A model generated the notes under the pieces. It did not search any database and had not been told where the DNA came from. It was given only the letters and a program-made list of their open reading frames with translations. A program made the translations under genes and the position numbers. 64,000 nucleotides of DNA, from the IMG/VR virus record IMGVR_UViG_3300049460_000128, positions 1 to 64,000 of that record, one strand, 5' to 3'. Shown piece after piece: positions 1 to 12,069 of the stretch; the first letter of the stretch is position 1, and the number at the start of each line of letters is the position of its first letter.

Positions 1-58
1 CACAAACTTTACAGGTATTGAATTGCATAACCGACTCCGTTTTGTTTACCATGTATCA

Positions 59-87
59 AGTATAAGTTCAAATGAACCACAAATCAA
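59..87 (-). promoter_or_regulatory. sigma70-type promoter with spacer operator motif
   Basis: Minus strand TTGATT-17 nt-TATACT; spacer ends GGTTCATTTGAACT. Confidence 0.75.
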
Positions 88-100
88 CTTTTATTTGCTT

Positions 101-451
101 TTACAGGCGGGCCGCTTCTTCAGCGGTTTCCACCTTGTAGCAGAGTGGCAACGGTTCGCCGTTCTCGCCCTTGCAGAAGTCGTCATGGCGATTGGCATGG
201 CTCAGCATTTCAGCACAACCACGGCAGTAGAATTTCATGCTACCACGATTGTACCAGGTAGCTGATGCTGGCCGCAGGCATGCGCTATAGAAGCAGGTGC
301 CGCCATAAAGGCCAGCATCGGCCGGCTTCTTAGGCCGCTCATAGCGCAACGTGTCTTCACTTTTGGGAACCGACGCCCTGGAATTGTAGGAGGACTTGGT
401 GGATTTGGATTTTACTTTGACGAGCTTGCCGTTTACGGTAGTGTATGCCAT
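101..451 (-). CDS. hypothetical Cys-rich protein
   Basis: 116-aa ORF with CxxxxC and CxxC; TAATG overlap with upstream gene. Confidence 0.7.
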   Translation of the reverse strand: MAYTTVNGKLVKVKSKSTKSSYNSRASVPKSEDTLRYERPKKPADAGLYGGTCFYSACLRPASATWYNRGSMKFYCRGCAEMLSHANRHDDFCKGENGEPLPLCYKVETAEEAARL

Positions 452-660
452 TATTGTTCGTATGCCAGGATGGCGAGAGGTTTATCACCCAGCACAGTTG
501 GCTGGCCTTTGATTGCATTTGCGAGTTCATTGCGTGCCGAATCTTTCATCGACAGTTCACCCATTACCTGCGAGCGTGCCGTCTCGATATCACTTGCGAC
601 CGCAATAAAGCGGCCAATATCAGTGTCCCACAGGTAGACCGTCAAAGCATTGGTTGCCAT
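451..660 (-). CDS. hypothetical protein
   Basis: Start reassigned to MATNAL (ATG at 660, preceded by GGAGG). Confidence 0.75.
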   Translation of the reverse strand: MATNALTVYLWDTDIGRFIAVASDIETARSQVMGELSMKDSARNELANAIKGQPTVLGDKPLAILAYEQ

Positions 661-682
661 ATTTCCTCCAAGTAGATACCAC

Positions 683-711
683 ATTATAGGTTCAAATGAA
701 CCAAAGATCAA
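683..711 (-). promoter_or_regulatory. sigma70-type promoter with palindromic operator
   Basis: TTGATC-17-TATAAT; spacer contains GGTTCATTTGAACC. Confidence 0.8.
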
Positions 712-712
712 C

Positions 713-737
713 AAAAAAGCCACACTAGGTGGCTTTT
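713..737 (-). terminator. intrinsic terminator
   Basis: AAAAGCCAC-CTAGT-GTGGCTTTTTT on minus strand. Confidence 0.75.
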
Positions 738-757
738 AGGATCACACGCTGGTACCA

Positions 758-905
758 GTGACATGAAACCTTTACGCGCCAGAGCACCATTTCTGGTAGG
801 TCTACACTTGGGCACTCCGGAGCTCGTGCGCTTCTCCGGATAGGTTGATAGGACTATCTCAACAGCAGGCGATTTACGGTGTCCACCGCCACGTTTCCGT
901 GTCAC
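758..905 (-). ncRNA. candidate structured ncRNA
   Basis: Intergenic; closing helix GTGACACGGAAAC/GTTTCATGTCAC with several internal hairpins. Confidence 0.5.
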
Positions 906-947
906 CTAACCGCATGGTAATACGTCTGGTACTACCATGCAAGCTTT

Positions 948-1505
948 TTAGTCAGCATCAAAAGCACTGACGTATACTGGGCGACCCACCAGCTTAACCA
1001 GTTCCGCTGAAGCAGTTGCACGATCAAAACGGTTGCGGATACGTGGGTTGGTGCTGAACGTGTAACCGGTGCCCATGTGGCCGGGCTGGTATTGGTACGA
1101 CTTGCCAGCTTGCAGATCTGCAACGATCTTATTAAGGTCTTCTGGAGTGAAGAAACGCTTGGCAGGGCCCAGGTTGAATTCGCGGGAATTTGCCAGACGT
1201 GCTTGAGCAGCTTTGACACGCTCGATTTGTTCAGGAAGCTCTTTGGCGATAGCCGCGGCAGTATCGATATAAAAGCTATCATCGTGGCCACGGCGGCTGA
1301 ACGTGAATTCTTTGCCTTGTGCTTTGTACTTGGTATCGCAGCTTGGCGCACGATCGTTGCCGTTCCAGAAGCTGAATACGACGCTCATACCTTCGCCTTC
1401 GCGGATAAACAGCATGACGTCTTCCTCGCCGGGAATCACCATTCCGTTGTATTGTGGAGCCAGAGTTTGCAGTAGGGCAGTTACTTGATCACGAAAAGTT
1501 GTCAT
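948..1505 (-). CDS. hypothetical protein
   Basis: 185-aa ORF, AGGAGG RBS, upstream promoter. Confidence 0.8.
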   Translation of the reverse strand: MTTFRDQVTALLQTLAPQYNGMVIPGEEDVMLFIREGEGMSVVFSFWNGNDRAPSCDTKYKAQGKEFTFSRRGHDDSFYIDTAAAIAKELPEQIERVKAAQARLANSREFNLGPAKRFFTPEDLNKIVADLQAGKSYQYQPGHMGTGYTFSTNPRIRNRFDRATASAELVKLVGRPVYVSAFDAD

Positions 1506-1530
1506 ATTACCTCCTGTTTATCATGTTCGT

Positions 1531-1559
1531 ATGATAAGTTCATTTGGTGTTTTAGTCAA
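1531..1559 (-). promoter_or_regulatory. sigma70-type promoter, operator in reverse orientation
   Basis: TTGACT-17-TATCAT; spacer ends ACACCAAATGAACT. Confidence 0.7.
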
Positions 1560-2077
1560 GCATCTCGCTCGAAAAGGATGACTTCCGGATGACGTGCTGC
1601 GGCAGCAGTCATCATCCGACGCAGATACAATTCGCCGTCGGGTTCATAACGAGAATTCGAGATGTTTCGTTTGCTGGACTTAGCATATTGGAACAATGCC
1701 TCAACGATCGCTTTGGAGACACCGCCCTGCTTGTATTCATCATGGGTGCTAATGTAGCCCACACCGATGGAATTTTCATGCCAAACAGTCGTCTCTGATA
1801 TGGCCGCAACGCCGACCAATTGCTCACCGCGTAAAGCCGCAAAATAGGTACGACTTTGAGTGTTCAGGTTGTGACGATTGAAGTTCCAGATATGATCGCC
1901 GACGTCAGCGTCGCGAAGGATGTAAAGGTCTTCGTAGGTCTTAATGATGCGAACTTCAATTGGCTTAGCCCAGTTCGCATCAACTTCACGTTGCCGTGCT
2001 TGCGCCTCAGTGCCGTGTTCTGGACAGTCTGGATCTTCAGCGATCCAAGGGCCACCAATAATATAGCATTCGCACAT
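1556..2077 (-). CDS. GNAT-family acetyltransferase with N-terminal Cys/His motif
   Basis: LVGVAAI...YISTHDEYKQGGVSKAIVEAL (acetyl-CoA motif A-like); N-term CEC...CPEHG. Confidence 0.7.
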   Translation of the reverse strand: MCECYIIGGPWIAEDPDCPEHGTEAQARQREVDANWAKPIEVRIIKTYEDLYILRDADVGDHIWNFNRHNLNTQSRTYFAALRGEQLVGVAAISETTVWHENSIGVGYISTHDEYKQGGVSKAIVEALFQYAKSSKRNISNSRYEPDGELYLRRMMTAAAARHPEVILFERDA

Positions 2078-2099
2078 GATTCCTCCAAAAGTTGATTAC

Positions 2100-2128
2100 A
2101 TTGTACGTTCATTTGGGCCATTAATCAA
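2100..2128 (-). promoter_or_regulatory. sigma70-type promoter, operator in reverse orientation
   Basis: TTGATT-17-TACAAT; spacer ends GGCCCAAATGAACG. Confidence 0.7.
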
Positions 2129-2354
2129 CTTCTGGTTGAGGCTCAGGGACCAGCAAGTGTGCAAAACGCAACTTGAACAACGTGGAGGCAGCGTCATTGC
2201 CATTAATGCAAATGGGAAATATCATTTCAAAATTAACTCGAGCCGTCCACCAGTCAATTTCTTCACTGGTAGGTTGGGATTCAAACCAGTTATATATTTC
2301 TGGGTTAAATACATGCCAGCTGTCAACTGACAGATAAAATTTATTGATTGCCAT
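2121..2354 (-). CDS. small hypothetical protein (C-terminal FxL family)
   Basis: 77 aa ending DAASTLFKLRF. Confidence 0.6.
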   Translation of the reverse strand: MAINKFYLSVDSWHVFNPEIYNWFESQPTSEEIDWWTARVNFEMIFPICINGNDAASTLFKLRFAHLLVPEPQPEVD

Positions 2355-2365
2355 ATTGATGATGT

Positions 2366-2389
2366 AAAAAAGCCGCCCGAAGGCGGCTT
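2366..2389 (-). terminator. intrinsic terminator
   Basis: AAGCCGCC-TTCG-GGCGGCTTTTTT on minus strand. Confidence 0.85.
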
Positions 2390-2395
2390 AGCGGA

Positions 2396-2507
2396 TACCA
2401 CAGTGAGGCGCCACTCTCAAAGGGGGTGCGTGTCAAGGAGTCTTCGTACGCACCACCAGACGAAATGTTTCAACCCCAGCACTTAGGCTCGTCACACCAC
2501 TATAGTA
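2396..2507 (-). ncRNA. candidate structured RNA (3' UTR or sRNA)
   Basis: Closing helix TACTATAGTG/CACTGTGGTA, internal GGTGCGT/ACGCACC helix, followed by terminator. Confidence 0.4.
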
Positions 2508-2516
2508 ACAGGTATA

Positions 2517-3257
2517 TCAAGCGAGGTCACGAGCTTTGCGGATATTTTCCGCACAGTCCATGAATTGTTGATACAGCTTTGGATTACGGAAGGCTTCGAT
2601 CTCGCACAGACGAATTGCAATCTCGATGTTCGCCTTGGAATCCAGTTCAGCCGCTGCTGGGGTGGCGAAGCTTGCTACCGGGTCGTTTTCCTTAGGCTTG
2701 ACGCCCATCTGGAATGGAACGCGGTTTTCAAACGGCTTAACCACCAGTTGTGTGATCTTGGCATCGGCTGCCCAGTAGCAATAGCCCGCACCTGGATTAC
2801 CAGGCTGGATTTGCTTGCGTTGGATCAACTTGTCGTTGGTGAGGTCTGCCAAAATACCAGTTGCCGTTTCCTTAGCACCGTGGCCCAGGAGTGCAAACTT
2901 GGTACGAATTCGCATTGACGTGATACCGGGATTTGTTTCGATCAAGTCCAAGATGAAATCAACTTTCTCTTGGGCTTTGTTTTTGATTGCAAGTTGAGCA
3001 TCCGAGATACCACCGGGCAATTCAATACGATCGTTGTTGTACCAGAAGTAATAACCCTTGTGGAGCTTGTCGGCGTCGATCGGCACACGATAGAAAGTTT
3101 CGGTCTCGACCAAGCGAGCGATCAAGCTATTGACGCGATTCTTGAGCTGTTCGGTCAATGGTTCGTCGGTGGCGCCGCAGCGTATATCGAACGAAGTTTG
3201 GCCTGGGTTTGCTTTCACGTAGTCGATGATTTTCGACTTCAGGGTTGTGGAGTCCAT
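2517..3257 (-). CDS. putative DNA-binding protein with two winged-helix-like repeats
   Basis: Repeats IIDYVKANPGQTSFDI and ILDLIETNPGITSMRI, each followed by GYxxW. Confidence 0.65.
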   Translation of the reverse strand: MDSTTLKSKIIDYVKANPGQTSFDIRCGATDEPLTEQLKNRVNSLIARLVETETFYRVPIDADKLHKGYYFWYNNDRIELPGGISDAQLAIKNKAQEKVDFILDLIETNPGITSMRIRTKFALLGHGAKETATGILADLTNDKLIQRKQIQPGNPGAGYCYWAADAKITQLVVKPFENRVPFQMGVKPKENDPVASFATPAAAELDSKANIEIAIRLCEIEAFRNPKLYQQFMDCAENIRKARDLA

Positions 3258-3337
3258 TGTTTCTCTTAGTTAGTGTTGAACAATTGGTGCCAGTCTATAC
3301 TGGCATTGTGCCAAACACCAAAACTAAGATTTCAACT

Positions 3338-3694
3338 TCATGCAGAAACTTCGTCTGCCCAGTCACCCGACAACGTGGCACCCTTGCGACCAAGCGGGGA
3401 ACGCTCCAAAACGCCGTCTGGCTTGACCCATGCCACACAGTTGTCCAAAGCTACACCGAAGGCGACTTTGTCTTGGGCGCGACTGGTTACGACACGGATG
3501 ATATCCCAGCCAAGCTTATATAGCTTTGCGAAGGTTGCAATTTGCTGATCGGTGGCGAGGTTTTGCATTTTATCTTCGCAGATCCACGCAAAGCGAGCAT
3601 TGATGCCCTGGCTACCGCGCACCATATCATGCGTGAGTGCGGTGATAGACAGTTTATCTTCGCGGCTTACCTTGAATGCAATGCGTTGTGCCAT
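3338..3694 (-). CDS. hypothetical protein
   Basis: Start MAQRIAF with GGAG RBS, downstream of promoter. Confidence 0.7.
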   Translation of the reverse strand: MAQRIAFKVSREDKLSITALTHDMVRGSQGINARFAWICEDKMQNLATDQQIATFAKLYKLGWDIIRVVTSRAQDKVAFGVALDNCVAWVKPDGVLERSPLGRKGATLSGDWADEVSA

Positions 3695-3723
3695 TTGTTG
3701 CTCCGTGTCTTTAACGTAAAAAC

Positions 3724-3752
3724 ATGATAGCACCAAATGAATCAAAGGTCAA
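3724..3752 (-). promoter_or_regulatory. sigma70-type promoter with operator motif
   Basis: TTGACC-17-TATCAT; spacer ends GATTCATTTGGTGC. Confidence 0.7.
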
Positions 3753-3796
3753 CAAAAAGGCCCACCGAAGTGAGCCTCTATTGACTGGTTACCAGA

Positions 3797-4825
3797 TTAC
3801 TTATTGTTGACCGCCAGGTAATGGCACAGTGGAATCATTTCATTCCAGGTTTCGGCAATACCTGCCAGCGTAGTGCTTTTGCCTTTTTTGGCCGAGAATT
3901 CTTTCGTCCAGTCATGGATTTCACCGTTTACCGCATCGAAGCCTTCCTGCTCTTCCATCACGTTGCGCAGTGCATCCTTGGCGATATACCGGCAGTTGGA
4001 CAGGTTGGTGAGGTCGGCAGTAGTGCGTTGTTCGACCATGGTGAATTTGTTGCCCTCGATAGTGTACTTGGCGTTCTGGCCTAGGTTGCTGATGGTAAAC
4101 AGCACTGCCAGCAGATCAATTTCGGGATTGGTCATACGTCGATCAGCTTTTTTCAAAGCTGCCATCTTATCAGTTGTAATTTCGCCGACCTTGCGAGCTT
4201 TTTGCACAAGATCGTACCAGGCTTGCTGCACTTCAGGTTTCAAGGCCGATGCAAGCTGACCTTCACGCGGGTACAGATTGATGCCAGTGTGGCTTGGTGC
4301 TTCTTTGTGGTAAACGTTCAGGGCGATATGCGTGCGATGGAATTCAATCGTACCGCGCAGCGTGCCATCGGCCGAATCACCTACCGCCCGAGTTTCGTAA
4401 GATGGTTCCAGGTTCAGGCCCGCAAAATCGAAGCCGGCGAATATCTCGGCCGCAAATGCGTTCGCCTTGATGTTCCAATTACGGCCATATTCGATCATGG
4501 CGTGTTGTTGAGCCACATAAGCGGCCAGTGCGTCGATGTCACGTTCGAGCGATTGTGGATTACCGCGCTGGTTCGAGAATTCTTTTGTGTCGACCAACAT
4601 AGCCTCCAGGCCTTTGTTAACCGTTTCTTCGTAGACGATGCCATCCATTTTGGTGGGAATATCGTTATGCTGGACCTCTACAGTCACGTTATACGGCAAT
4701 TGATACGTTTCTGGGTAGCGAGTACCAAACAGACTTGCGGTTTTAGCTGACATCGGCTCCTGGTTCAGTTTTTTGAAGAATGCGGTCAGGATGTCTGCTT
4801 GTGCTTGGGTCAGATTTGGGATCAT
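3797..4825 (-). CDS. hypothetical protein
   Basis: 342-aa ORF with own promoter and terminator. Confidence 0.85.
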   Translation of the reverse strand: MIPNLTQAQADILTAFFKKLNQEPMSAKTASLFGTRYPETYQLPYNVTVEVQHNDIPTKMDGIVYEETVNKGLEAMLVDTKEFSNQRGNPQSLERDIDALAAYVAQQHAMIEYGRNWNIKANAFAAEIFAGFDFAGLNLEPSYETRAVGDSADGTLRGTIEFHRTHIALNVYHKEAPSHTGINLYPREGQLASALKPEVQQAWYDLVQKARKVGEITTDKMAALKKADRRMTNPEIDLLAVLFTISNLGQNAKYTIEGNKFTMVEQRTTADLTNLSNCRYIAKDALRNVMEEQEGFDAVNGEIHDWTKEFSAKKGKSTTLAGIAETWNEMIPLCHYLAVNNK

Positions 4826-4857
4826 GTTTTACTCGCTAGTGCGTTTAAGATGTTCCT

Positions 4858-4886
4858 ATTATAGATTCAAATGAACCATTAATCAA
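4858..4886 (-). promoter_or_regulatory. sigma70-type promoter with operator motif
   Basis: TTGATT-17-TATAAT; spacer ends GGTTCATTTGAATC. Confidence 0.8.
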
Positions 4887-4887
4887 C

Positions 4888-4911
4888 AAAAAAGCCACCC
4901 GAAGGTGGCTT
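4888..4911 (-). terminator. intrinsic terminator
   Basis: AAGCCACC-TTCG-GGTGGCTTTTTT on minus strand. Confidence 0.85.
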
Positions 4912-4929
4912 CTTGAATCAAGTATTTGA

Positions 4930-5574
4930 TTAAGCTGGGTCTGTTACCGTTACCGCGATAGTAGCAGTCACGGTATTCAGTGCAGTGCTCGTGATCGTAA
5001 TCGTTGCCGAACCAGCAGCTACCGCAGTCACCAGACCGCTTGCTGATACAGTTGCAAAGCCAGTTGCGGACGACGTGTAGGTGACAGTCTGAACAGCACC
5101 AGCCGGAACAACCGAGGCAGTGATCTGACTGGTGTCACCGACCACCAGAGTCATAGTGGCTGGTGAACGTGTGATGCTAGTTGGAGCAGGTGGTGGGGTT
5201 GGTACCACTTCCAGAGCTGCTTGAGTTGCCGATGCCGAACCAAGAGTCCACGACAGAGTTGAGCCATCAGTTGTGTTGCACGAAGCCGACATCAGTTTCG
5301 ATACGTAACGAACAGTGCTCGATGCATCAGTGATCTGGATGGTTGCTTGACCAGCAGCCAACGAGGTTGCTTGTGCGGTGGTGACCACGAGGTCAACGGT
5401 GAACATGTTTGTGCCGTCAGCGGTAACCAGGTACTTGACTGGACCCAGTTGCTTGACGATGTAGCCGGTTACGACTGCGGTGCCGTTATGGAAACGAACA
5501 CGAATTTTACCTGGCTCTGCGCCAAAGTTTGAGTTGTTGATTGGACGACCCATAAGTATCTCCTGAAAAGCCAT
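4930..5574 (-). CDS. virion protein with C-terminal Ig-like (Big_2) domain
   Basis: TLVVGDTSQITASVVP...VTYTSS...ATVSASGLVTAVAAGSATITIT; TAAATA late-type motif upstream. Confidence 0.8.
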   Translation of the reverse strand: MAFQEILMGRPINNSNFGAEPGKIRVRFHNGTAVVTGYIVKQLGPVKYLVTADGTNMFTVDLVVTTAQATSLAAGQATIQITDASSTVRYVSKLMSASCNTTDGSTLSWTLGSASATQAALEVVPTPPPAPTSITRSPATMTLVVGDTSQITASVVPAGAVQTVTYTSSATGFATVSASGLVTAVAAGSATITITSTALNTVTATIAVTVTDPA

Positions 5575-5630
5575 TTCGCAATGACATGATTATGAGGTAT
5601 TTATGACTTTTCAGTGAATCGTCGCTGAGG

Positions 5631-5858
5631 TTATTTGCCCACAAATCCTTCGGCTTTGATGGCCATACGTTCACGCCCCATAGCCTTCAGGAGACGATCG
5701 GCGCAGGAATGATGCAGCTCAACTTGATAGTGTGTGTGACGGCCAATAGTCGCCGTCGCGGAGGAGATCACCTGCCCATGGAATTCTGGTACCGGACTGT
5801 TATTGGCGATGGTCTCGATAGGATGACCACATGCGTCGCAAATGACTTGGATTGCCAT
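5631..5858 (-). CDS. small Zn-binding hypothetical protein
   Basis: MAIQVICDACG...HHSC; AAGGA RBS. Confidence 0.65.
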   Translation of the reverse strand: MAIQVICDACGHPIETIANNSPVPEFHGQVISSATATIGRHTHYQVELHHSCADRLLKAMGRERMAIKAEGFVGK

Positions 5859-5866
5859 GATATTCC

Positions 5867-6004: not shown

Positions 6005-6025
6005 GCGCTCCTTAATAGATGTTCC

Positions 6026-6054
6026 ATTATAGAGCCACATGAACGAAAAATCAA
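6026..6054 (-). promoter_or_regulatory. sigma70-type promoter with operator variant
   Basis: TTGATT-17-TATAAT; spacer ends CGTTCATGTGGCTC. Confidence 0.7.
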
Positions 6055-6188: not shown

Positions 6189-6247
6189 ACAAGTGTCTCC
6201 TGTTATTTTCCACCAATATAGCATGATATGGTATTTAGAAGACAAAT

Positions 6248-6275
6248 AAAAAAGCCCGCCGAAGCGAGCTTTTTT
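6248..6275 (-). terminator. intrinsic terminator ending the tmRNA operon
   Basis: AAAAAAGCTCGC-TTCG-GCGGGCTTTTTT. Confidence 0.85.
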
Positions 6276-6280
6276 GAGAC

Positions 6281-6606
6281 TTGGATGATGAGGTATGTCT
6301 CTACCCCCACCGTTTAGGCTGCTACAGCCTGACGGAACGAAGAATCGTTTGCATTTACAACGTGCCGACTTTTATTTTCGTGAATCATCGACTTTCACGT
6401 GTTGTCATCTTCGGCTTATTCACCCTGTCGAAACCAGGTCAGGCCCATCATATAAGATTCTCTCGCTTACGTCTCGCGGGATACTGCGCTTTATCCTGAT
6501 AGTGGCCAGCGAAGTTTATCATGCGCTGCTGGTCTAACCTACCGAAAATCTATATGGTGGACCTGTGGGGAATCGAACCCCAGTCCAGAATGCCTCTACG
6601 TCCAAA
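6281..6606 (-). ncRNA. ssrA: tmRNA, circularly permuted (two-piece)
   Basis: Acceptor piece ...GGACTGGGGTTCGATTCCCCACAGGTCCACCA ends at 6555; coding piece starts GGGCCTGACCTGGTTTCGAC at 6446; G3:U70 pair; tag ORF 6352-6314 = ANDSSFRQAVAA*. Confidence 0.92.
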
Positions 6607-6668
6607 TCTGTCAGTTGCCTGACCACAACAATGTAATGCGCCTATCAGGCGGGGTAAGCCCCGTCATC

Positions 6669-6750
6669 AATGCGTATTGGTTAGAATACGTTTCCCCTGT
6701 GACCGCTCGAAGTGTCACCCCTGTACTCAGTACCCTAACCAATAAACATT
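6669..6750 (-). ncRNA. candidate small structured RNA
   Basis: Long closing helix AATGTTTATTGGTTAG/CTAACCAATACGCATT with two inner hairpins. Confidence 0.5.
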
Positions 6751-6759
6751 TGCAAAATC

Positions 6760-6898
6760 GTTTAAGCGTGAAGGGAGTCGAACCCTTGAGCGCCCTGCCG
6801 CTACGTTACCGTAGTGTCTGACTCGAACAGACCACTAGGCTCTCCATGCTCTAGTATGTACTCAACCGGGAGATGCCTACCACCCACTGGACCTAAAC
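6760..6898 (-). ncRNA. tRNA-like RNA with two T-loop hairpins
   Basis: 7-bp closing stem GTTTAGG/CTTAAAC; GTCTG-TTCGAGT-CAGAC and GGG-TTCGACT-CCC hairpins. Confidence 0.6.
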
Positions 6899-6936
6899 TT
6901 TTTGCTGGTGACACATTACTGCATCACCAAGACCAC

Positions 6937-6965
6937 AGTATATGGCAATCCATACATGCGGTCAA
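6937..6965 (-). promoter_or_regulatory. sigma70-type promoter of the ncRNA/tmRNA operon
   Basis: TTGACC-17-TATACT. Confidence 0.75.
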
Positions 6966-6984
6966 GCATTATTTACCACTTTGT

Positions 6985-7890
6985 TTAATTCATATGCGAA
7001 TAATCATCTGCCATATGAGTGCGCAGCTTCTTCAAAGCCGCCACCTCAATCTGACGAACACGTTCGCATGAAATATTGTACTTGTCTGCCATCGCCCGCA
7101 ACGGCACACCAGCCCCTTCATCATTTACCAGGAAACGTTGCTCGATGATATACTGCTCGCGTTCGTTCAACTTTTCCATGTACTTCTGGAGGCCGGTTGT
7201 CTGAAGTTCAACCATACGCATACTGGACAATACGTTGGTGGGTTCCAGCGTGTCGTCACTCAGATAATGGTATACGAAGTCATCCATATCAGCACTGTCA
7301 AGGAACTGATTGGTTGGAGGCACATCGATGGAGCTATCACCGCCACGCATACGCATTTCAACTTCACGCACGTCTTCTGGTCTGACCTCCAACGCATCAG
7401 CGGCCCATTTGATCTGTTCTTCGGTCATGCTGCGCCCTACTTCCAAACGACTACGCAGGTTGAAGAACAGCTTGCGATGAGCTTTGGTAGTGAAGCTTTT
7501 CACTATGCGAGAATTGCGAATCACATAGTCCATCATCTCTGCTTTGATCCAGGGAATCGCATAGGTGGCAAAACGCACATTCTGGGCGGGATCGAAGCGA
7601 TGAATTGCTTTCATCATTCCAATACTTCCTTCTTGAACTAGATCATCTTGGCTCATGCCGTAGAATTTCAATTGACGGGCTTGGCTCATGACCAAACGCA
7701 TATAGCTATGAGCCAGTGCGTCAATTGCCTTTTGATCATTGTTTCTCACTCGTACCCACAGCGCATCTTCTTGCGGCGGGGTAAGCATGGGAAACCGCAT
7801 GGCGGTGCTATGGTAATTGTCAATGCTGCTGAGGTTTACCGTAACACCAAGGTTCAATGGCTTATTAATACCAGTAGCGTCAAGTTTCAT
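6985..7890 (-). CDS. rpoH: RNA polymerase sigma factor, RpoH (sigma-32) family
   Basis: DLVQEGSIGMMKAIHRFDP, RFATYAIPWIKAE, RpoH box HRKLFFNLR, region 4 ISCERVRQIEVAALKKLR. Confidence 0.9.
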   Translation of the reverse strand: MKLDATGINKPLNLGVTVNLSSIDNYHSTAMRFPMLTPPQEDALWVRVRNNDQKAIDALAHSYMRLVMSQARQLKFYGMSQDDLVQEGSIGMMKAIHRFDPAQNVRFATYAIPWIKAEMMDYVIRNSRIVKSFTTKAHRKLFFNLRSRLEVGRSMTEEQIKWAADALEVRPEDVREVEMRMRGGDSSIDVPPTNQFLDSADMDDFVYHYLSDDTLEPTNVLSSMRMVELQTTGLQKYMEKLNEREQYIIEQRFLVNDEGAGVPLRAMADKYNISCERVRQIEVAALKKLRTHMADDYSHMN

Positions 7891-7919
7891 TCTTATTCTG
7901 CATTATTGTAAGTTCATGC

Positions 7920-7948
7920 AGTATAGAGCAACAATCACTTGACGTCAA
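7920..7948 (-). promoter_or_regulatory. sigma70-type promoter of rpoH-like gene
   Basis: TTGACG-17-TATACT. Confidence 0.65.
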
Positions 7949-7961
7949 TGCCGTATGAATA

Positions 7962-9020
7962 TTACATGCGAGAATTTGCCTCAACGGAGATATAGTTCTT
8001 CTCTTCAGTGGTCCAGCGCACTTTGACGTTCGGGTATTTTGCCTGAATTTCATCAACGATTTTCTGCATCTTGGCACCCCATTCGTCATCCAATTCTTCC
8101 CAGTCGTAGTCTTGTTCGTCACCATCTTCAAGTTCAGCATCGACCGGAATCTGCCAACCACCCCAGTTACGAACCTCGAAACTATAGCCCGTCCCTTCTT
8201 TTGCAATATCACGCCATTCACCAGTATAACCTGAACTATACCCAAGTTTTCCAGACGACATTGCCGATTTCATCAAGGAACGAATCCGTGATAAAACGTC
8301 TTGCATTTCTTGTGGTGATGCTTTGGCGATAGCCTGTGGTTCAGCTTTTGGCTTAGGTGCTTCTACGGGTTTTGGATCAGATTGATCTTTCAAGGCAAGA
8401 TTACCCTTACCATACGATACTCGCCCACGTCCTGGCACCATTTGAGAACTAGTCCATTCCCAACGCCCCAAAGGTTGATTGGTCTCTGGATTATAGTACA
8501 TGATGACTTGATTCTTCTTACCTGAACCATAGCTATGCAATGACGGCAAGTTAGGCGCATCAATATAGGCGATTGGAACATCGCCAAAGGTTTGCTTTAT
8601 AGCATCTTTAAGCTCCCGAATTTCAGTCCAACTGGTATATTCGTTAAATTTTGGATTGGTGGGCAATGGTGGAAGTTCTTTCTTGGGCTCGGGTTTTTGT
8701 TCCACGGCTTTCGGTTCAACTTTAGCTGCTGGTGCTTTCGTCGTTGGCGCCGCTTCTTTGCCTGGTTTCTTCGCAGGCATGAACGGTTCTTTGGCCAAGA
8801 CGTATTTGAATCCACCACCGTCTGGTGTTCGGAAACCCACAATACCAACTTTTGGATCCATGTAGTAAACCGCACCACCAGCTTGTGGCTTGCTTTCTTT
8901 CCACGCGGTAGCGCCCAGCTTACGTATGCCAGCTTCAAATTCAGCTTTGGAGGAGAGGGGATTTGCGAGGTCGAACTTGTTCTTGTAGTTCGCCTCGAGG
9001 ATGATTTGATTGTAACGCAT
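7962..9020 (-). CDS. putative internal head protein (modular, Pro/Ala/Lys linkers)
   Basis: N-term MRYNQIILE; TAAATA upstream. Confidence 0.65.
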   Translation of the reverse strand: MRYNQIILEANYKNKFDLANPLSSKAEFEAGIRKLGATAWKESKPQAGGAVYYMDPKVGIVGFRTPDGGGFKYVLAKEPFMPAKKPGKEAAPTTKAPAAKVEPKAVEQKPEPKKELPPLPTNPKFNEYTSWTEIRELKDAIKQTFGDVPIAYIDAPNLPSLHSYGSGKKNQVIMYYNPETNQPLGRWEWTSSQMVPGRGRVSYGKGNLALKDQSDPKPVEAPKPKAEPQAIAKASPQEMQDVLSRIRSLMKSAMSSGKLGYSSGYTGEWRDIAKEGTGYSFEVRNWGGWQIPVDAELEDGDEQDYDWEELDDEWGAKMQKIVDEIQAKYPNVKVRWTTEEKNYISVEANSRM

Positions 9021-9057
9021 GAAATACTCCCAATTAAGAGAGTATTTATCCGTGGCA

Positions 9058-9249
9058 TCAATCTACTGATTTGATGTTTTTCAATCGTTGCTGCTTGATT
9101 TCTTCTTCACGCTGGATTCCCCAACCGATCATTTGATCAGTAAATGCCTTGCGCATTGCAGGGTTTTCACGGAACTTTTTATCAAATCGCCAGACGAATG
9201 CTCGATAGACGATTTGATAGTCAAACCAGGCAATCAAGCGAGCGATCAT
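9058..9249 (-). CDS. hypothetical protein
   Basis: Start MIARLIAW directly after upstream stop. Confidence 0.6.
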   Translation of the reverse strand: MIARLIAWFDYQIVYRAFVWRFDKKFRENPAMRKAFTDQMIGWGIQREEEIKQQRLKNIKSVD

Positions 9250-9250
9250 A

Positions 9251-9616
9251 TTATGCCACAATGTTGTGACGTTCCATTGCGGCCTGGATGGCATCAAGGT
9301 CAACATGATGCCGTGCAATCGCACGTTTCAGTTCAGACATATACTTGATGTCCCAGAACAGATTGAATTCGTTTGGCAAGTGCGGATCGCGTGCTTGCGG
9401 GAAGTCGTTCAGTTCAGTGCGCGGTTTCCAGGACTTGAATTCGTCCATGGATACAGTATGGCCACCAGCCTCATCGTCGAAGTAATAATGGATGCGTTGT
9501 TTGGCACCATCATAGCCATAGGTCTTTGCAATACGACCACATGGTAGTTCATAAAAAATACCTACGGTATTCATTGTTATCTTTCTTGCCTCTTTGGGCA
9601 TGTTGTAATTCGTCAT
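9251..9616 (-). CDS. hypothetical protein
   Basis: 121-aa ORF in operon. Confidence 0.7.
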   Translation of the reverse strand: MTNYNMPKEARKITMNTVGIFYELPCGRIAKTYGYDGAKQRIHYYFDDEAGGHTVSMDEFKSWKPRTELNDFPQARDPHLPNEFNLFWDIKYMSELKRAIARHHVDLDAIQAAMERHNIVA

Positions 9617-9675
9617 GAGACGTCATGGTTCGTCACCAGTGCGACAAACATTAACGGGATGACCCAAGTGTCAGA

Positions 9676-9960
9676 TTAGTCTCGCCACTCGCCTATACCA
9701 TCCCAATTGGATGATAACACAGTTCTGGCAACTGAGCGAGCTACTGGATGATTGAAACGTGGATCGGATATGATGGCATAGAAGACGTCCTGCATGTCTT
9801 CCAGATTTGGCGGGAGTTGTTGACCGAATTGACGTACTTCGTTTTTGAATTGAGCAATCTGCGCACGATTGTGGGTTTTAAGCACTTCATAATCGCAGAT
9901 CACACACTCCATGAGAATGAAGAAGTCGATGACGTAATATAGACGTTCCTGAGAGATCAC
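9676..9960 (-). CDS. hypothetical protein
   Basis: GTGA overlap with upstream gene. Confidence 0.65.
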   Translation of the reverse strand: MISQERLYYVIDFFILMECVICDYEVLKTHNRAQIAQFKNEVRQFGQQLPPNLEDMQDVFYAIISDPRFNHPVARSVARTVLSSNWDGIGEWRD

Positions 9961-10169
9961 AGTGTAATCAACTCCGTGGTTTCGCCTGTTTTCGGATCAC
10001 GCCACATCACCTTGCTACCAGCGTCTTGGTGGGCAAGGATCGTCGCCTGCAAGGCCAGGGCTTTGCGCACGACTTCGGTGTATGATGATGCTTCGGTTTT
10101 GTCCTTGAGACGTTTTAACCGGTCGTATGCACTTGCGGGTAATTCCAATTGAACACGCGTCTTAGCCAT
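9957..10169 (-). CDS. ribbon-helix-helix (CopG-like) DNA-binding protein
   Basis: MAKTRVQLELPASAYDRLKRLKDKTEASSYTEVVRKAL. Confidence 0.75.
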   Translation of the reverse strand: MAKTRVQLELPASAYDRLKRLKDKTEASSYTEVVRKALALQATILAHQDAGSKVMWRDPKTGETTELITL

Positions 10170-10434
10170 TGTGTTGCTCCGGCCACAATTCATTGATACG
10201 TGCGATGAACAGATCAATGTCGCGGAATACTTCGTCAGGGTTGGAGAAGGCGATGCAGTCTTCTTGACTTGACCGCCACAGTCCATATACGTTCAGGATT
10301 GGGCGATGTGCAATGGTGTATTCTTGCCCATTGTATTGGAAGTCGAAAAACGCCTCAGCATTTGGATCATATGCACCATCGCGTATGATCGTTAAGTGGG
10401 GCAGCTCCGCTTTCAACCTATCATCAATTTTCAT
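10162..10434 (-). CDS. hypothetical protein
   Basis: Start MKIDDRL; the longer ORF start runs into the tRNA-like RNA. Confidence 0.65.
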   Translation of the reverse strand: MKIDDRLKAELPHLTIIRDGAYDPNAEAFFDFQYNGQEYTIAHRPILNVYGLWRSSQEDCIAFSNPDEVFRDIDLFIARINELWPEQHNG

Positions 10435-10449
10435 AACTGCCTTTTTGTT

Positions 10450-10626
10450 AGGCACCCCGGGTGGAATCGAACCACCGACCCTTCGATTAAATATCGACCG
10501 CTCTATCGTCAAAACTATTCAACAGGTCAACAGCGGGACGTCACTCGCTATCTTGCTGTCTAGCCGTTTATTCAATTCCACCGGCGACCGTCGTCACCTT
10601 ATGTGGTACCTCTGAGCTACGGGGCA
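10450..10626 (-). ncRNA. tRNA-like RNA (Lys-UUU-like) with ~110-nt D-loop
   Basis: GCCCCG-TA-GCTC...GAGC, anticodon loop TATTTAA, GGTGG-TTCGATT-CCACC, CGGGGT; ends CCT rather than CCA. Confidence 0.7.
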
Positions 10627-10665
10627 TTGCTTGGTTAAAAGATGATTGCTCATCTCTTGAATTCT

Positions 10666-10826
10666 TGGCGTCAACTGCCGGATTCGAACCGGACGACGGA
10701 ATACACTTTTGACCTCTATGAGGCGGGTATGCCCTTACTTTCACCGTTAGGCTGTCCACTTCTGCCCATGCCATTCAGCAAAGACATATCTGCGGCGTTC
10801 GTTCTGCCAGACTGAACTAAGTCAAC
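10666..10826 (-). ncRNA. tRNA frame with anticodon arm replaced by ~105-nt insert
   Basis: Acceptor GTTGACT/AGTTGAC-G-CCA, D arm GTTC-AGTCTGGCA-GAAC, T arm CCGG-TTCGAAT-CCGG. Confidence 0.75.
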
Positions 10827-10828
10827 AA

Positions 10829-10933
10829 GTATGGCGGGGAATTGAACCTCCAGTCCAAAATGAGCAGCACCATGGCGCCGTTTCACTTGGCCCTAGTTTC
10901 CTAGGCTGCTTCCCAAAGCAGCGTCGACCATAC
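10829..10933 (-). ncRNA. tRNA/tmRNA-TLD-like structured RNA
   Basis: GTATGGT/GCCATAC stem, GGACTGGAGG-TTCAATT-CCCC T-arm, three hairpins including CCTAG-GAAA-CTAGG. Confidence 0.55.
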
Positions 10934-11087
10934 AATGTGGGTTGGAGTAACTTGGCGATTTAATCCGGGACTCTGCATTCTTGCCCGACTTCATGTTTCG
11001 CCACCTGAAAGCTAGTTTGTCTAGTCCTCACCACGGAGTCAATAGTACAGCAAACCACGGAAGTTCGCAACACTATTGACACCACAT

Positions 11088-11939
11088 TCACTTGCGGGGT
11101 TTCTTTATTGCACTGAAAAGTAGCATCAATGCAACACCGGTAAGGAACATCACCCAACTTTCAGGCTCTGGAACAGGAGTCGTAATGGGTGGAGTGACGA
11201 TTGGCGGAACAATCGGTGGAGTAATTACAATGCAGCAACCACCGCCACCACCACCGCCATTGTCGATCGGGCTCCACGGAGTGAATCCGTGCCAACCGTT
11301 ACCGCCAGGATTCACCAATGAATTGTTGGGCTCACCTGAGCCAGTAGTGATACTCCCTGGGGCAACATTTGACGCACCACCACCCCCGCCTCCGCCACCA
11401 CCTTCAGTTGGTTCTGCGGGTTGTTCAGCTTGTGCTTGAGCAACTTCAGCAGTTTCACCACCACCTTTATGTGAACCAGTAGTTACCTGGGTTTCCGGCA
11501 ACCGCTTCACACGGCTGATATTTTGGCAAATAGTTGGTACCAGGATACAAGTTTCGCCCTCGCAGTACACCAATGCTTCCTCTTTACGAGTGGGTGACCA
11601 TTTGTCACGAGTTGTTGCCAGACAGATTTGCGGCTTAGCACTCTTGCCACCAAAGTGCATATCGGTGATGGTCGACTCATATGCGTGGATGCCAGTAATT
11701 CGATCTTTCGTGATGGTCACGACTTCATCGAACTGCTTTTTCTCCAAACGCTGTTTGAACTTAGCCCGCAGTTCAGGCGAAAGATCACGATAATGATCAA
11801 TCGCATTCGAGACGGCGCCCTTGTAGGGATTGACACCTGGGTTGTCCCACGAACAGGTGTCAAGTATTACCGCTTGGGAACTGGCCATGGTCCCCAGGAA
11901 CAAAAGTCCCATCAATGCCTTAAAAAGTTTCATATACAA
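11088..11939 (-). CDS. MHFG-type PEP-CTERM surface protein
   Basis: Signal peptide, CSWDNPG, DMHFGG, Gly-rich linker, C-term VPEPESW + TM helix + KKPRK. Confidence 0.85.
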   Translation of the reverse strand: MYMKLFKALMGLLFLGTMASSQAVILDTCSWDNPGVNPYKGAVSNAIDHYRDLSPELRAKFKQRLEKKQFDEVVTITKDRITGIHAYESTITDMHFGGKSAKPQICLATTRDKWSPTRKEEALVYCEGETCILVPTICQNISRVKRLPETQVTTGSHKGGGETAEVAQAQAEQPAEPTEGGGGGGGGGASNVAPGSITTGSGEPNNSLVNPGGNGWHGFTPWSPIDNGGGGGGGCCIVITPPIVPPIVTPPITTPVPEPESWVMFLTGVALMLLFSAIKKPRK

Positions 11940-12040
11940 TTCCTCAATTGGTTGCCCTATATATCATATGGCGCAATCGAATGGTATATTAAAATTATGC
12001 TAATTCATAAAACCAAATCATCAACTATTTGATATTTGCC

Positions 12041-12069
12041 TTGATCTGGCAACCAAATGAATGTATCAT
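12041..12069 (+). promoter_or_regulatory. sigma70-type promoter with operator motif
   Basis: TTGATC-17-TATCAT; spacer ends CAACCAAATGAATG. Confidence 0.7.

What the first reader, a model, noticed from the sequence alone, without database searches (positions are those of the whole stretch)
59..12069. Orientation-independent 14-bp operator at a fixed position in eight promoters
Seen: promoters at 59-87, 683-711, 1531-1559, 2100-2128, 3724-3752, 4858-4886, 6026-6054 and 12041-12069 all have TTGAYY-17-TAYMMT. The last 14 spacer bases match GGTTCATTTGAACC or variants (core TTCATTTG, TTCATGTG in one), five forward and three reversed, always centred alike. Inference: a site for a dimeric regulator of an early regulon. 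Candidates in the window are the RHH protein (9957-10169) and the double winged-helix protein (2517-3257).
Basis: partly seen in the sequence, partly recalled or inferred. Interest (0 to 1): 0.6.

Follow-up and report, generated by a model that had tools for sequence, protein, structure and literature searches.

The report
Shared palindromic operator in phage promoters
A giant (jumbo) phage from rhizosphere soil and its relatives carry the same 12-14 bp palindrome (GTTCA-NN-TGAAC) at one fixed place inside dozens of their strong early promoters.

Summary
All eight sites match TTGAYY-17-TAYMMT (10 hits in the window, 0.29 expected), and each carries GGTTCAnnTGAACC-like sequence at spacer positions 4-17, five forward and three reversed.

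The window is the start of a 296.6-kb jumbo-phage contig from a rhizosphere metagenome, about 70% complete. About 20 such promoters occur on the contig. At least 105 occur across five related contigs, and more distant kin have none.

Each half-site is conserved to sequence, the centre dinucleotide varies freely, and mirrored positions show no compensatory covariation. This fits a dimeric protein site and does not fit a stem-loop.

The best candidate is a 74-aa stand-alone LexA-type winged-helix protein:
- It is present in every complete motif-bearing relative.
- Within IMG/VR it occurs only in those contigs.
- It is absent from ten motif-less relatives.
- It lies on a contig found at 100% identity in the same sequencing run as the window.

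Binding, repression and transcription start sites are untested. In type this is a new variant of operator-in-spacer regulons, set in cassettes that resemble T4-type PeSL terminator-promoter units.

The parts
59..87 (-). Sigma70-type promoter TTGATT-17-TATACT. Operator GGTTCATTTGAACT lies at 65-78 (both half-sites perfect). The gene it drives starts at about 29 and runs off the contig start.
683..711 (-). Promoter TTGATC-17-TATAAT. Operator GGTTCATTTGAACC lies at 689-702 (perfect 14-mer palindrome apart from the centre). A terminator hairpin at 715-737 abuts the -35.
1531..1559 (-). Promoter TTGACT-17-TATCAT. Reversed operator ACACCAAATGAACT lies at 1537-1550 (right half-site strong). It drives the 185-aa gene 948-1505, which is conserved in G001, G004 and L259.
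2100..2128 (-). Promoter TTGATT-17-TACAAT. Reversed operator GGCCCAAATGAACG lies at 2106-2119. It drives the GNAT acetyltransferase gene 1556-2077.
3724..3752 (-). Promoter TTGACC-17-TATCAT. Forward operator GATTCATTTGGTGC lies at 3730-3743 (left half-site strong).
4858..4886 (-). Promoter TTGATT-17-TATAAT. Operator GGTTCATTTGAATC lies at 4864-4877. A terminator hairpin at 4889-4914 abuts the -35. It drives the 342-aa gene 3797-4825.
6026..6054 (-). Promoter TTGATT-17-TATAAT. Operator CGTTCATGTGGCTC lies at 6032-6045 (left half-site strong, centre TG).
12041..12069 (+). Promoter TTGATC-17-TATCAT. Reversed operator CAACCAAATGAATG lies at 12050-12063. This is the first rightward transcription unit.
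6937..6965 (-). Sigma70-type promoter without the operator, upstream of the tmRNA gene. Its counterpart is conserved in relative L259.
7920..7948 (-). Sigma70-type promoter without the operator, upstream of the phage sigma-factor gene. Its counterpart is conserved in L259.
9957..10169 (-). It has no homolog in G001-G005.
2517..3257 (-). Homologs occur only in close kin of this contig (L259), not in G001-G005.
6985..7890 (-). Phage RpoD-like sigma factor (Sigma70_r2 plus r4).

Best explanation
**What it is.** The 12-14 bp dyad GTTCA-NN-TGAAC, centred near -19.5 and spanning -26 to -13, is an operator built into most of this phage lineage's strong sigma70-type early promoters.

**Proposed mechanism (inferred).** Host RNA polymerase with its primary sigma factor fires these near-consensus promoters immediately after infection. 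A phage-encoded dimeric DNA-binding protein then accumulates and occupies the spacer. In about a fifth of promoters it also occupies an auxiliary copy at -47..-36. This blocks the polymerase and shuts the early regulon down together. Operator-free promoters, such as those of the regulator itself, the sigma-factor gene and the tmRNA, escape.

**Most likely protein.** It is a 74-aa stand-alone LexA-type winged-helix protein encoded next to a His_Phos_1 gene. It is not in the window. It lies on contig G002 (43087-43311), which occurs in the same sequencing run and is probably another piece of the same roughly 0.5-Mb genome.

**Shown.**
- The motif, its position, its dyad character and its restriction to one clade.
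- The domain identity of the candidate protein and its co-distribution with the motif.

**Inferred.**
- Binding, repression rather than activation, timing, and that G000 and G002 are one genome.
For: **The motif.**
- 10 promoter matches against 0.29 expected, and about 20 motif promoters on the contig.
- 15, 37, 20, 18 and 15 motif promoters in G000, G001, G002, G003 and G004, with consensus TTGAct..ttgTTCAt.TGAa..TAt.AT.
- GTTCAnnTGAAC counts are 5, 24, 5, 2 and 3 against 0.0-0.6 expected in these genomes. The counts are 0-1 in G005, Atu_ph07, Phosso, CBB and PA5oct.

**Dyad character.**
- Left-only, right-only and two-half sites all occur, and the centre varies freely.
- Mirrored positions are no more complementary than column frequencies predict: for example, pair 6/15 shows 46 observed against 53.7 expected, and pair 5/16 shows 37 against 34.3.

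**Second position.** TTCAT lies 12 nt before the -35 in 13 of 104 promoters, with about 30 hits genome-wide against 2 for a control pattern.

**The motif is optional.** Motif-free sigma70-type promoters exist in the same genome and are conserved in L259. The more distant relative G005 has dozens of TTGACA-17-TATAAT promoters without the motif.

**The candidate protein.**
- Pfam LexA_DNA_bind scores 35.4, 38.0 and 25.8 bits against a cut-off of 23.7. The top solved-structure hits are the LexA DNA-binding domain, 1lea at E 3.8e-5.
- Within IMG/VR it is found only in G001, G002 and G004.
- It is absent at E<=1 from nine motif-less relatives and from G005.
- Four further contigs that carry it have 1, 1, 4 and 5 motif promoters within 14-20 kb.
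- Run X1 holds both window 1-6200 and G002 6500-10500 at 100% identity.

**An independent parallel.** In unrelated viral contigs, one consensus promoter with GTTCAATTGAAC in the same spacer register, plus GTTCAGATGAAC just after the -10, drives an XRE-type repressor-like gene.
Against: - There are no expression, start-site or binding data of any kind.
- The motif-bearing genomes form one clade, so the co-occurrence of gene and motif is a single evolutionary event. Many other clade-specific genes share that pattern.
- The LexA-like gene is not on the window's contig. Linking G000, G002 and G003 rests on co-presence in one run, complementary gene content and summed size, not on an assembled join.
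- LexA dimerises through its C-terminal domain, which this protein lacks, so dimer formation is unshown.
- The half-sites are arranged GTTC-N4-GAAC, the inverse of the Gram-positive LexA box GAAC-N4-GTTC (my own knowledge), so no known LexA geometry can simply be transferred.
- In G004 the element is mostly one-sided (GTTCATTTGGTA), with no site passing the 4-of-5 test on both halves. Sister lineages have a different, one-orientation spacer element. Both facts would also fit a factor that reads the promoter asymmetrically.
- L261 and L262 have only one motif promoter each, which is near the background rate.
Confidence: 0.55

Rival explanations
1. PeSL-type stem-loop. The inverted repeat is a structural element (hairpin or cruciform) of a mobile terminator-promoter cassette, as in T4-type phages. 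On this view it is conserved because it attenuates upstream transcription or provides homology for recombinational gene shuffling, and no protein reads its sequence.
For: - The phage belongs to the T4-related jumbo group: a RecA/UvsX-like protein is 62-68% identical to those of Atu_ph07 and Phosso, and UvsY, gp25, gp53 and rIIA/B-like genes are present.
- Real terminator hairpins abut the -35 at 715-737 and 4889-4914.
- The promoters sit in a hyperplastic region of small orphan genes whose content differs strongly between relatives.
- Arbiol et al. [quoted passage not shown]
Against: - No compensatory covariation is seen. Only 1 of 105 sites has a double change that keeps pairing at positions 6/15, and complementarity is at or below the independent expectation at every pair.
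- About half of the sites keep only one half-site, for example GTTCAttTGGTG, and cannot form a stem.
- A 5-bp stem is weak, and separate strong terminators are already present.
- The specific sequence is preserved across genomes whose core proteins are only 50-79% identical, while spacer positions 1-3 and the upstream flank carry almost no information.
- A role as recombination homology is not excluded, but it would not explain the dyad.
Confidence: 0.12
2. Extended core promoter. The spacer element is read by the transcription machinery itself: host RNA polymerase, possibly modified by an injected or early phage factor, or a MotA-like activator. It would then serve to favour phage early promoters, as the extended T4 early-promoter consensus does, rather than to repress them.
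For: - Nearly the whole promoter is conserved, including the discriminator and initial transcribed region (TGAA.ATGGTAAAC), in 105 promoters.
- Sister lineages L246 and L250 have their own conserved spacer (TCACCTATTCTGC, 16-bp spacer, single orientation), so lineage-specific spacers are general in this supergroup.
- In G004 the element is mostly one-sided.
Against: - RNA polymerase and sigma read DNA directionally, yet here the same asymmetric variant occurs in both orientations about one centre: GTTCATTTGGTG at 3724 and CACCAAATGAAC at 1531.
- The -35 and -10 are already near consensus with an optimal 17-bp spacer, so no activator is needed.
- Motif-free sigma70-type promoters work alongside the motif promoters in the same genomes.
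- No MotA, AsiA-type or conserved extra sigma was found in all motif genomes.
Confidence: 0.13
3. The RHH protein (9957-10169) or the tandem winged-helix protein (2517-3257) is the operator-binding regulator.
For: - Both are plausible DNA binders: RHH_1 scores 21.4 bits against a cut-off of 20.5, and AlphaFold2 gives two helix-helix-helix-strand-strand winged-helix units with Foldseek hits to MepR/MarR among others.
- Both lie in the early region.
- Both are conserved in the closest relatives, which also carry the motif.
Against: - Neither has a homolog in G001, G002, G003 or G004, which share the operator. This also holds with family profiles.
- RHH_1 finds only a sub-threshold hit in G001 and none in G004.
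- The best structural matches of the 246-aa protein are tandem winged-helix scaffold proteins (RPC34, RPC62, ESCRT-II, ScpB) that mostly mediate protein contacts.
Confidence: 0.05
4. The WGR-like basic proteins are the binder. These occur as three paralogs per genome (G000 264232-264624, 265126-265518 and 271975-272337), and some carry Lys/Ala-rich tails.
For: - This is the only early-region family shared by G000, G001, G002 and G004.
- The proteins have pI about 10.
- The AlphaFold2 model has pLDDT 84. VIA-align gives Z 6.9 to 2ra8 and Z 5.2-5.7 to PARP1/2/3 WGR domains. Pfam WGR gives 19.3 bits on one paralog.
- Iyer et al. 2021 (PMC7824862) list WGR among predicted transcription-factor domains of a few jumbo phages.
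- The genes sit behind motif promoters, half of them with the auxiliary upstream copy.
Against: - Homologs also occur in Phosso and in seven other jumbo contigs that lack the motif.
- Solved WGR domains bind DNA breaks, not specific sequences (titles of the PDB hits).
- The fold match is modest (Z below 8).
Confidence: 0.08
5. A host-encoded dimeric factor binds the sites.
For: - No regulator is encoded on the window's own contig that is shared with all motif genomes.
- The phage tmRNA matches the betaproteobacterial model, which hints at a common host group.
Against: - A host repressor site in every early promoter would be strongly selected against.
- No known global regulator that I can recall has this box (my own knowledge, not tested).
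- A clade-specific phage protein of a classic operator-binding family co-occurs with the motif.
Confidence: 0.05

Closest known systems
PeSLs (promoter-early stem-loops) of T4-type phages (Arbiol et al. 2010, PMC2839356; Comeau et al. 2014, PMC4122927)
   Same: - Composite terminator hairpin, near-consensus sigma70 early promoter (TTGACA-17-TATAAT), Shine-Dalgarno sequence and start codon, repeated in front of small orphan genes in hyperplastic regions of T4-related genomes.
- In phi1/RB49 the inverted repeats often lie between the -35 and -10.
   Different: - PeSL stems are described by structure (GN-loop-CN; A3-4G3-loop-C3T3-4), not as one specific sequence.
- Here a defined sequence, GTTCA-NN-TGAAC, is kept. 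Single half-sites suffice, there is no covariation, and a candidate binding protein co-occurs.
- Mini-circle formation and recombination were not tested here.
LexA / SOS boxes (LexA N-terminal winged-helix domain, Pfam PF01726; structure 1lea)
   Same: - The candidate regulator matches LexA_DNA_bind above Pfam's threshold and the LexA DNA-binding domain in the PDB.
- LexA is a dimeric repressor of a multi-promoter regulon whose 12-16 bp palindromic boxes overlap promoters (textbook knowledge).
   Different: - The protein is the DNA-binding domain alone, 74 aa. It has no S24 self-cleavage and dimerisation domain, so it would not respond to RecA.
- The box is GTTC-N4-GAAC, not CTGT-N8-ACAG or GAAC-N4-GTTC (my own knowledge).
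- It is encoded by a presumably lytic jumbo phage and aimed at the phage's own early promoters.
Dispersed-operator regulons of phages and plasmids: P1 C1 repressor, mycobacteriophage L5 gp71 stoperators, IncP KorA/KorB/TrbA, P22 Arc at Pant (my own knowledge)
   Same: One small repressor controls many promoters through a short conserved site at a stereotyped place in or next to the -35/-10 elements.
   Different: - Those systems serve lysogeny or plasmid maintenance.
- P1 and L5 sites are asymmetric.
- None uses a LexA-type domain or this sequence.
- Here 50 or more sites may exist per genome in a T4-related jumbo phage.
T4 MotA box and extended T4 early-promoter consensus (PMC2988021 is held in the library; details from my own knowledge)
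   Same: A phage-specific conserved element lies between -35 and -10 in a T4-related phage that relies on host RNA polymerase.
   Different: - The MotA box replaces the -35, is asymmetric and activates.
- Here the -35 is intact, the element is a dyad, and no MotA homolog was found.
XRE-type autoregulated gene in unrelated viral contigs G006-G010
   Same: - The same palindrome (GTTCAATTGAAC) sits in the same spacer register of a consensus promoter.
- A second copy lies just after the -10.
   Different: - There is a single promoter per genome.
- The adjacent protein is a Cro/C1-type HTH with no homolog in the jumbo phages.

Membership tests
Sigma70-type (primary sigma) promoter | -35 TTGACA-like and -10 TATAAT-like hexamers separated by 17 +/- 1 bp | tested here: met
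   All eight sites match in 9-10 of 12 positions with a 17-bp spacer. Enrichment is 10 against 0.29 expected.
Sigma70-type (primary sigma) promoter | Transcription starts about 7 nt after the -10 | not testable with these tools
   No RNA run holds the sequence. An RBS and start codon follow within 20-40 nt at 7 of 8 sites.
Operator of a dimeric DNA-binding protein | Two half-sites in inverted orientation, each conserved to a sequence consensus, about a fixed centre | tested here: met
   GTTCA lies at spacer positions 5-9 and TGAAC at 12-16. Left-only, right-only and two-half sites are all enriched in five genomes.
Operator of a dimeric DNA-binding protein | Conservation is of sequence, not of base-pairing potential | tested here: met
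   No excess complementarity over shuffled pairings at any mirrored pair.
Operator of a dimeric DNA-binding protein | A cognate protein binds it | not testable with these tools
   Only co-occurrence with a LexA-type winged-helix gene could be shown.
PeSL (promoter-early stem-loop cassette) | Terminator or stem-loop joined to a sigma70-like early promoter, an SD sequence and a start codon, repeated in variable regions | tested here: met
   Terminators at 715-737 and 4889-4914 abut the -35. The promoters are repeated in front of orphan genes.
PeSL (promoter-early stem-loop cassette) | The inverted repeat acts as a stem-loop (structure is maintained) | tested here: not met
   About half of the sites cannot pair, and there are no compensatory changes.
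PeSL (promoter-early stem-loop cassette) | Recombination between copies (mini-circles, indels flanked by copies) | not tested
   Gene content between copies differs strongly among relatives, but no breakpoints were mapped.
LexA_DNA_bind (PF01726), for the candidate regulator | Score above Pfam's gathering threshold | tested here: met
   35.4, 38.0 and 25.8 bits against 23.7 for the G004, G001 and G002 proteins. The top PDB hit is LexA 1lea at E 3.8e-5.
LexA repressor (full family) | C-terminal S24 peptidase and dimerisation domain with RecA-stimulated self-cleavage | tested here: not met
   The proteins are 71-75 aa and end right after the wing (alignment A3). The protein is therefore not a LexA, only a LexA-type DNA-binding domain.
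SOS box | CTGT-N8-ACAG or GAAC-N4-GTTC type palindrome | tested here: not met
   The motif is GTTC-N4-GAAC, with the half-sites in the opposite order. The reference boxes are from my own knowledge.
   The domain is met in G000 (21.4 against 20.5 bits), but there is no counterpart above threshold in G001-G004.

The most novel reading that the evidence does not exclude
A lineage of presumably lytic T4-related jumbo phages of roughly 0.4-0.5 Mb runs its whole immediate-early programme, 50 or more promoters per genome, under one global switch. That switch would be a minimal 74-aa LexA-type winged-helix protein with no cleavage domain, binding a GTTCA-NN-TGAAC operator placed in the promoter spacer. 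Sister lineages would have swapped both the spacer element and the factor. If so, 'promoter spacer code plus small cognate factor' is a general, fast-evolving layer of early-gene control, and perhaps of cross-immunity between co-infecting relatives, in giant phages.
Probability: 0.3. Interest if true: 0.75.

Novelty: new variant of a known kind. Interest (0 to 1): 0.58.

Why it matters
How large lytic phages that rely on host RNA polymerase switch off their early genes is known in detail only for T4 (AsiA/MotA, ADP-ribosylation). Jumbo phages of the Rak2 / Atu_ph07 / PA5oct group encode hundreds of orphan early genes, and their control is essentially unstudied.

A single short operator in every early promoter, plus a tiny candidate repressor, gives a directly testable model using gel shift, in vitro transcription and reporter assays. 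None of these needs the uncultured host.

It also offers:
- a sequence tag for finding early genes in metagenomic jumbo-phage contigs;
- a reinterpretation of some 'stem-loops' seen between the -35 and -10 in T4-type promoter cassettes;
- a compact orthogonal repressor-operator pair for synthetic biology.

Tried and rejected
**Near and protein-level searches.**
- Megablast of window 1-8000 against 50,697 phage records gave no match. Protein-level kin are only distant: PA5oct, Rak2-like, Atu_ph07 and Phosso.

**Expression data.**
- There are none. The sole public run holding the sequence is a DNA metagenome.

**Conserved regulator on the G000 contig.**
- Methods: tblastn and phmmer of all ORFs against G001-G005, Pfam scans of about 70 conserved small proteins, and one Atlas look-up.
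- No DNA-binding regulator shared by all motif genomes was found on this contig.

**Pfam families searched in six frames across G000-G005.**
- HTH_3 (searched in G000-G004 only), HU, MotCF, HTH_31, HTH_17, MazE/AbrB and Sigma70_r4: none is shared by all motif genomes.

**G000-only HTH-like early proteins.**
- 273763-274146 (weak Cro/C1-type) and 271298-271858 (HTH_38, E 2.7e-4) are not conserved in relatives.

**The XRE protein of contigs G006-G010.**
- It has no homolog in the jumbo phages.

**The motif in cultured relatives.**
- It is absent from Atu_ph07, Phosso, CBB and PA5oct. The PA5oct paper reports only -35 and -10 boxes (PMC7318152).

**WGR-like family as regulator.**
- It was downgraded because it also occurs in motif-less genomes.

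**Homodimer prediction for a candidate.**

**Literature.**
- Searches for a described palindromic spacer element in jumbo-phage early promoters found nothing relevant.

Full report
**1. What the window is.** The window is the first 64 kb of a single 296,594-bp contig with 46.3% G+C. Its proteins place it among T4-related jumbo phages.
- A RecA/UvsX-like protein is 62-68% identical to those of Agrobacterium phage Atu_ph07 and Sinorhizobium phage Phosso, and about 58-65% identical to Rak2-like phages.
- Ribonucleotide reductase, UvsY, gp25, gp53 and rIIA/B-like genes are present.
- No close cultured relative exists.
- The only public run that holds the sequence is a rhizosphere DNA metagenome, so nothing can be said about transcripts.
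- IMG/VR's CheckV estimate rates the contig linear and about 70% complete.

**2.
- TTGAYY-N17-TAYMMT matches ten times in the window against 0.29 expected.
- The set is larger than reported. A weight-matrix scan finds about 20 members on the contig, clustered at 1-12 kb (minus strand) and 254-285 kb (plus strand), that is, at both contig ends, with two more at 168 and 188 kb.
- Three members have the core one base closer to the -35, and one has a 16-bp spacer.
- The 12-mer GTTCAnnTGAAC occurs 5 times against 0.4 expected, and only two copies lie outside promoters.
- Two of these promoters (683-711 and 4858-4886) are immediately preceded by a strong intrinsic terminator, and nearly all are followed by an RBS and a start codon.

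**3. It is a clade-wide feature.** Pattern scans of IMG/VR recovered four large viral contigs with the same architecture:

| Genome | Size | Relation to G000 | Motif promoters (same criteria) |
|---|---|---|---|
| G000 | 297 kb | the window's contig | 15 |
| G001 | 524 kb | core proteins 50-79% identical | 37 |
| G004 | 424 kb | core proteins 50-79% identical | 15 |
| G002 | 87 kb | fragment rich in orphan early genes | 20 |
| G003 | 113 kb | fragment rich in orphan early genes | 18 |

- A closer relative from another study (L259) has at least 9 motif promoters in 20 kb.
- The pooled consensus is c-TTGAct-..ttgTTCAt.TGAa..-TAt.AT-.tGaa.at.gtaaa.
- In G001 the commonest centre dinucleotide is TA, which makes the core a perfect palindrome, GTTCATATGAAC.
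- The more distant G005 (329 kb) has dozens of TTGACA-17-TATAAT promoters without the motif.
- Atu_ph07, Phosso, CBB and PA5oct lack it.
- Sister lineages found later have a different conserved spacer: TCACCTATTCTGC, a 16-bp spacer, in one orientation.
- The motif is therefore a lineage-specific addition to otherwise ordinary sigma70-type promoters.

**4. Protein site or structure?** The closest described architecture is the PeSL of T4-type phages. It joins a terminator hairpin to a sigma70 early promoter, and stem-loops often lie between the -35 and -10 (PMC2839356, PMC4122927). I tested the structural reading on 105 promoters.
- Mirrored positions are no more complementary than independent column frequencies predict, and double changes that keep pairing are almost absent.
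- Roughly half of the sites retain only one good half-site, yet that half keeps the consensus sequence and its mirrored position. Examples are GTTCATTTGGTG and its exact reverse complement CACCAAATGAAC.
- The centre dinucleotide varies freely.
- Information content is near zero upstream of the -35 and at spacer positions 1-3, so this is not simply recent duplication of whole cassettes.
- A further copy (TTCATTTGGTGC) abuts the -35 at -47..-36 in about a fifth of promoters. A motif-like 14-mer overlapping the -10 and discriminator appears in 14 of 104.
- Motif-free sigma70-type promoters stand in front of the phage sigma-factor gene and the tmRNA, and they are conserved in L259.

Together these point to sequence-specific recognition by a two-fold symmetric protein. 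Given near-consensus hexamers at the optimal spacing, repression by occlusion is more likely than activation. That last step is inference.

**5.
- The RHH protein, the 246-aa protein and the RpoD-like sigma factor have no homolog in G001-G005 by phmmer at E<=10. The same holds for the RHH and 246-aa proteins with family profiles.
- Both proteins are confined to the G000/L259 subclade.

A broad search for a shared regulator on the G000 contig found nothing.
- The only early-region family common to all motif genomes is a basic WGR-like protein with three paralogs per genome.
- It also occurs in Phosso and in seven motif-less jumbo contigs.

Because the contig is incomplete, I then searched DNA-binding families in all motif genomes.
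- A weak Sigma70_r4/HTH_17 signal in G001 led to a 71-75-aa family present in G001, G002 and G004.
- It is a stand-alone LexA-type winged-helix domain: Pfam LexA_DNA_bind at 25.8-38.0 bits against a cut-off of 23.7, and LexA 1lea at E 3.8e-5 in the PDB.
- It always follows a His_Phos_1 gene.
- Within IMG/VR it occurs only in those three contigs.
- It is absent at E<=1 from Atu_ph07, Phosso, CBB, PA5oct and five sister-lineage genomes, and from G005.
- Four further metagenomic contigs that carry it have motif promoters nearby: 5 and 4 in two of them, and only 1 each in the other two.
- Its own promoter is sigma70-like but lacks the palindrome. That fits a regulator which is not switched off by its own product.

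**6. Is that gene in the same phage as the window?** It is not on this contig. However, several facts suggest that G000, G002 and G003 are pieces of one roughly 0.5-Mb genome.
- The contig ends lie inside the early region.
- G002 and G003 share many genes with G001 and G004 but almost none with G000.
- The three lengths sum to 497 kb, close to G001 and G004.
- The run that holds window 1-6200 also holds G002 6500-10500, including the LexA-type gene, at 100% identity on a 13.4-kb contig.

This is plausible but unproven.

**7. Caveats.**
- All motif genomes form one clade, so the gene-motif association is one evolutionary event, and other clade-specific genes share it.
- The protein lacks LexA's dimerisation domain.
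- The box is GTTC-N4-GAAC, the inverse of the Gram-positive LexA box (my own knowledge).
- G004's version of the element is largely one-sided.
- No binding, start-site or timing data exist.
- The homodimer prediction could not be run.

I put about 0.7 on 'operator for a symmetric DNA-binding protein' and about 0.45 on the LexA-type protein being that protein. The combined statement as written gets 0.55, because it names the LexA-type protein only as the most likely binder.

**8. Verdict.** The pattern is real, non-random and conserved. It is best read as a global early-promoter operator set in PeSL-like cassettes. In type it is a new variant of known operator-in-spacer regulons. It is notable for its scale (50 or more sites per genome), for its setting (T4-related jumbo phages that are presumably lytic) and for the minimal LexA-type candidate factor.

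Noticed in passing
window 6223-6647 (-); G000 269178-269696 (+): The phage encodes its own tmRNA (ARAGORN tag ANDSSFRQAVAA; Rfam beta_tmRNA at 87.6 bits and tmRNA_permuted at 93.5 bits) and, elsewhere on the contig, an SmpB protein (Pfam E 5e-55). Together these make a complete trans-translation pair. The betaproteobacterial tmRNA model hints at the host group.
   Followed up: partly
window 6985-7890 (-): A full-length RpoD-like sigma factor (Sigma70_r2 plus r4) is expressed from a motif-free promoter at 7920-7948. It is present in close kin (L259) but absent from G001-G005.
   Followed up: partly
about +4..+18 of the motif promoters, e.g. window 1513-1527 (-); all motif genomes and G005: The leader (G)AACATG(G/A)TAAAC(AA) is conserved between the -10 and the GGAG ribosome-binding site. 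It is also kept in G005, which lacks the palindrome (ACATACACTAACAACAAGGAG). It may be an initial-transcribed or 5'-UTR element independent of the operator.
   Followed up: partly
G000 264163-264627, 265126-265521, 271924-272340 (+): Three paralogous basic WGR-like proteins per genome, some with Lys/Ala/Pro-rich tails. Their leaders are long and conserved and contain a GCTGC...GCAGC hairpin. Homologs are widespread in Phosso-like jumbo phages.
   Followed up: yes
L246, L250 (IMG/VR 3300049044_000033, 3300034072_000926): Sister-lineage jumbo phages have their own stereotyped early promoter: GG-TTGACA-nnTCACCTATTCTGC-TAAAGT-GGTGA...CAGGAGATCGA-ATG. It has a 16-bp spacer and a single orientation. 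In L244, L245 and L247, long inverted repeats (CTGGTGAG...CTCACCAG) bracket the -35.
   Followed up: partly
L226 4178-4620 (-) and identical sites in G006-G010: Unrelated 77-138-kb viral contigs have one promoter, TTGACATGAGGTTCAATTGAACTTATAAT, followed by GTTCAGATGAAC. It drives a 111-aa Cro/C1-type HTH gene. This is the same palindrome in the same register, apparently an autoregulated repressor.
   Followed up: partly
window 738-947 and 2391-2516 (-): Two stretches of about 130-210 nt with no ORF lie between a gene end or terminator and the next gene. They look structured and gave no Rfam hit at gathering threshold.
   Followed up: no
window 10450-11090 (-) and 12559-12709 (-): The first region holds tRNA-like pieces (a T-arm/acceptor-like GGTTCGATTCC) that ARAGORN does not call. 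The second is a 151-nt Rfam tRNA match (31.5 bits), which suggests a tRNA with a long insertion.
   Followed up: no
window 21525-22025 (-); 1556-2077 (-); G000 286942-287871 (-): Three further genes were noticed: an anti-CBASS Acb1 homolog (Pfam E 6e-36), a GNAT acetyltransferase behind a motif promoter, and a tandem-PAS-domain protein conserved in G001 and G004.
   Followed up: no
G000 232099-232110: A perfect GTTCATTTGAAC lies outside a sigma70 promoter, one base before CATAAATA. That sequence resembles the T4-type late promoter TATAAATA and lies upstream of a large structural-looking gene.
   Followed up: no
G000, G002, G003 as wholes: G000 (297 kb, about 70% complete), G002 (87 kb) and G003 (113 kb) have complementary gene content. 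Pieces of G000 and G002 were each found in run X1, G002 at 100% identity; G003 comes from the same IMG metagenome as G002. They are probably fragments of one roughly 0.5-Mb genome that broke at repeated promoter cassettes.
   Followed up: partly
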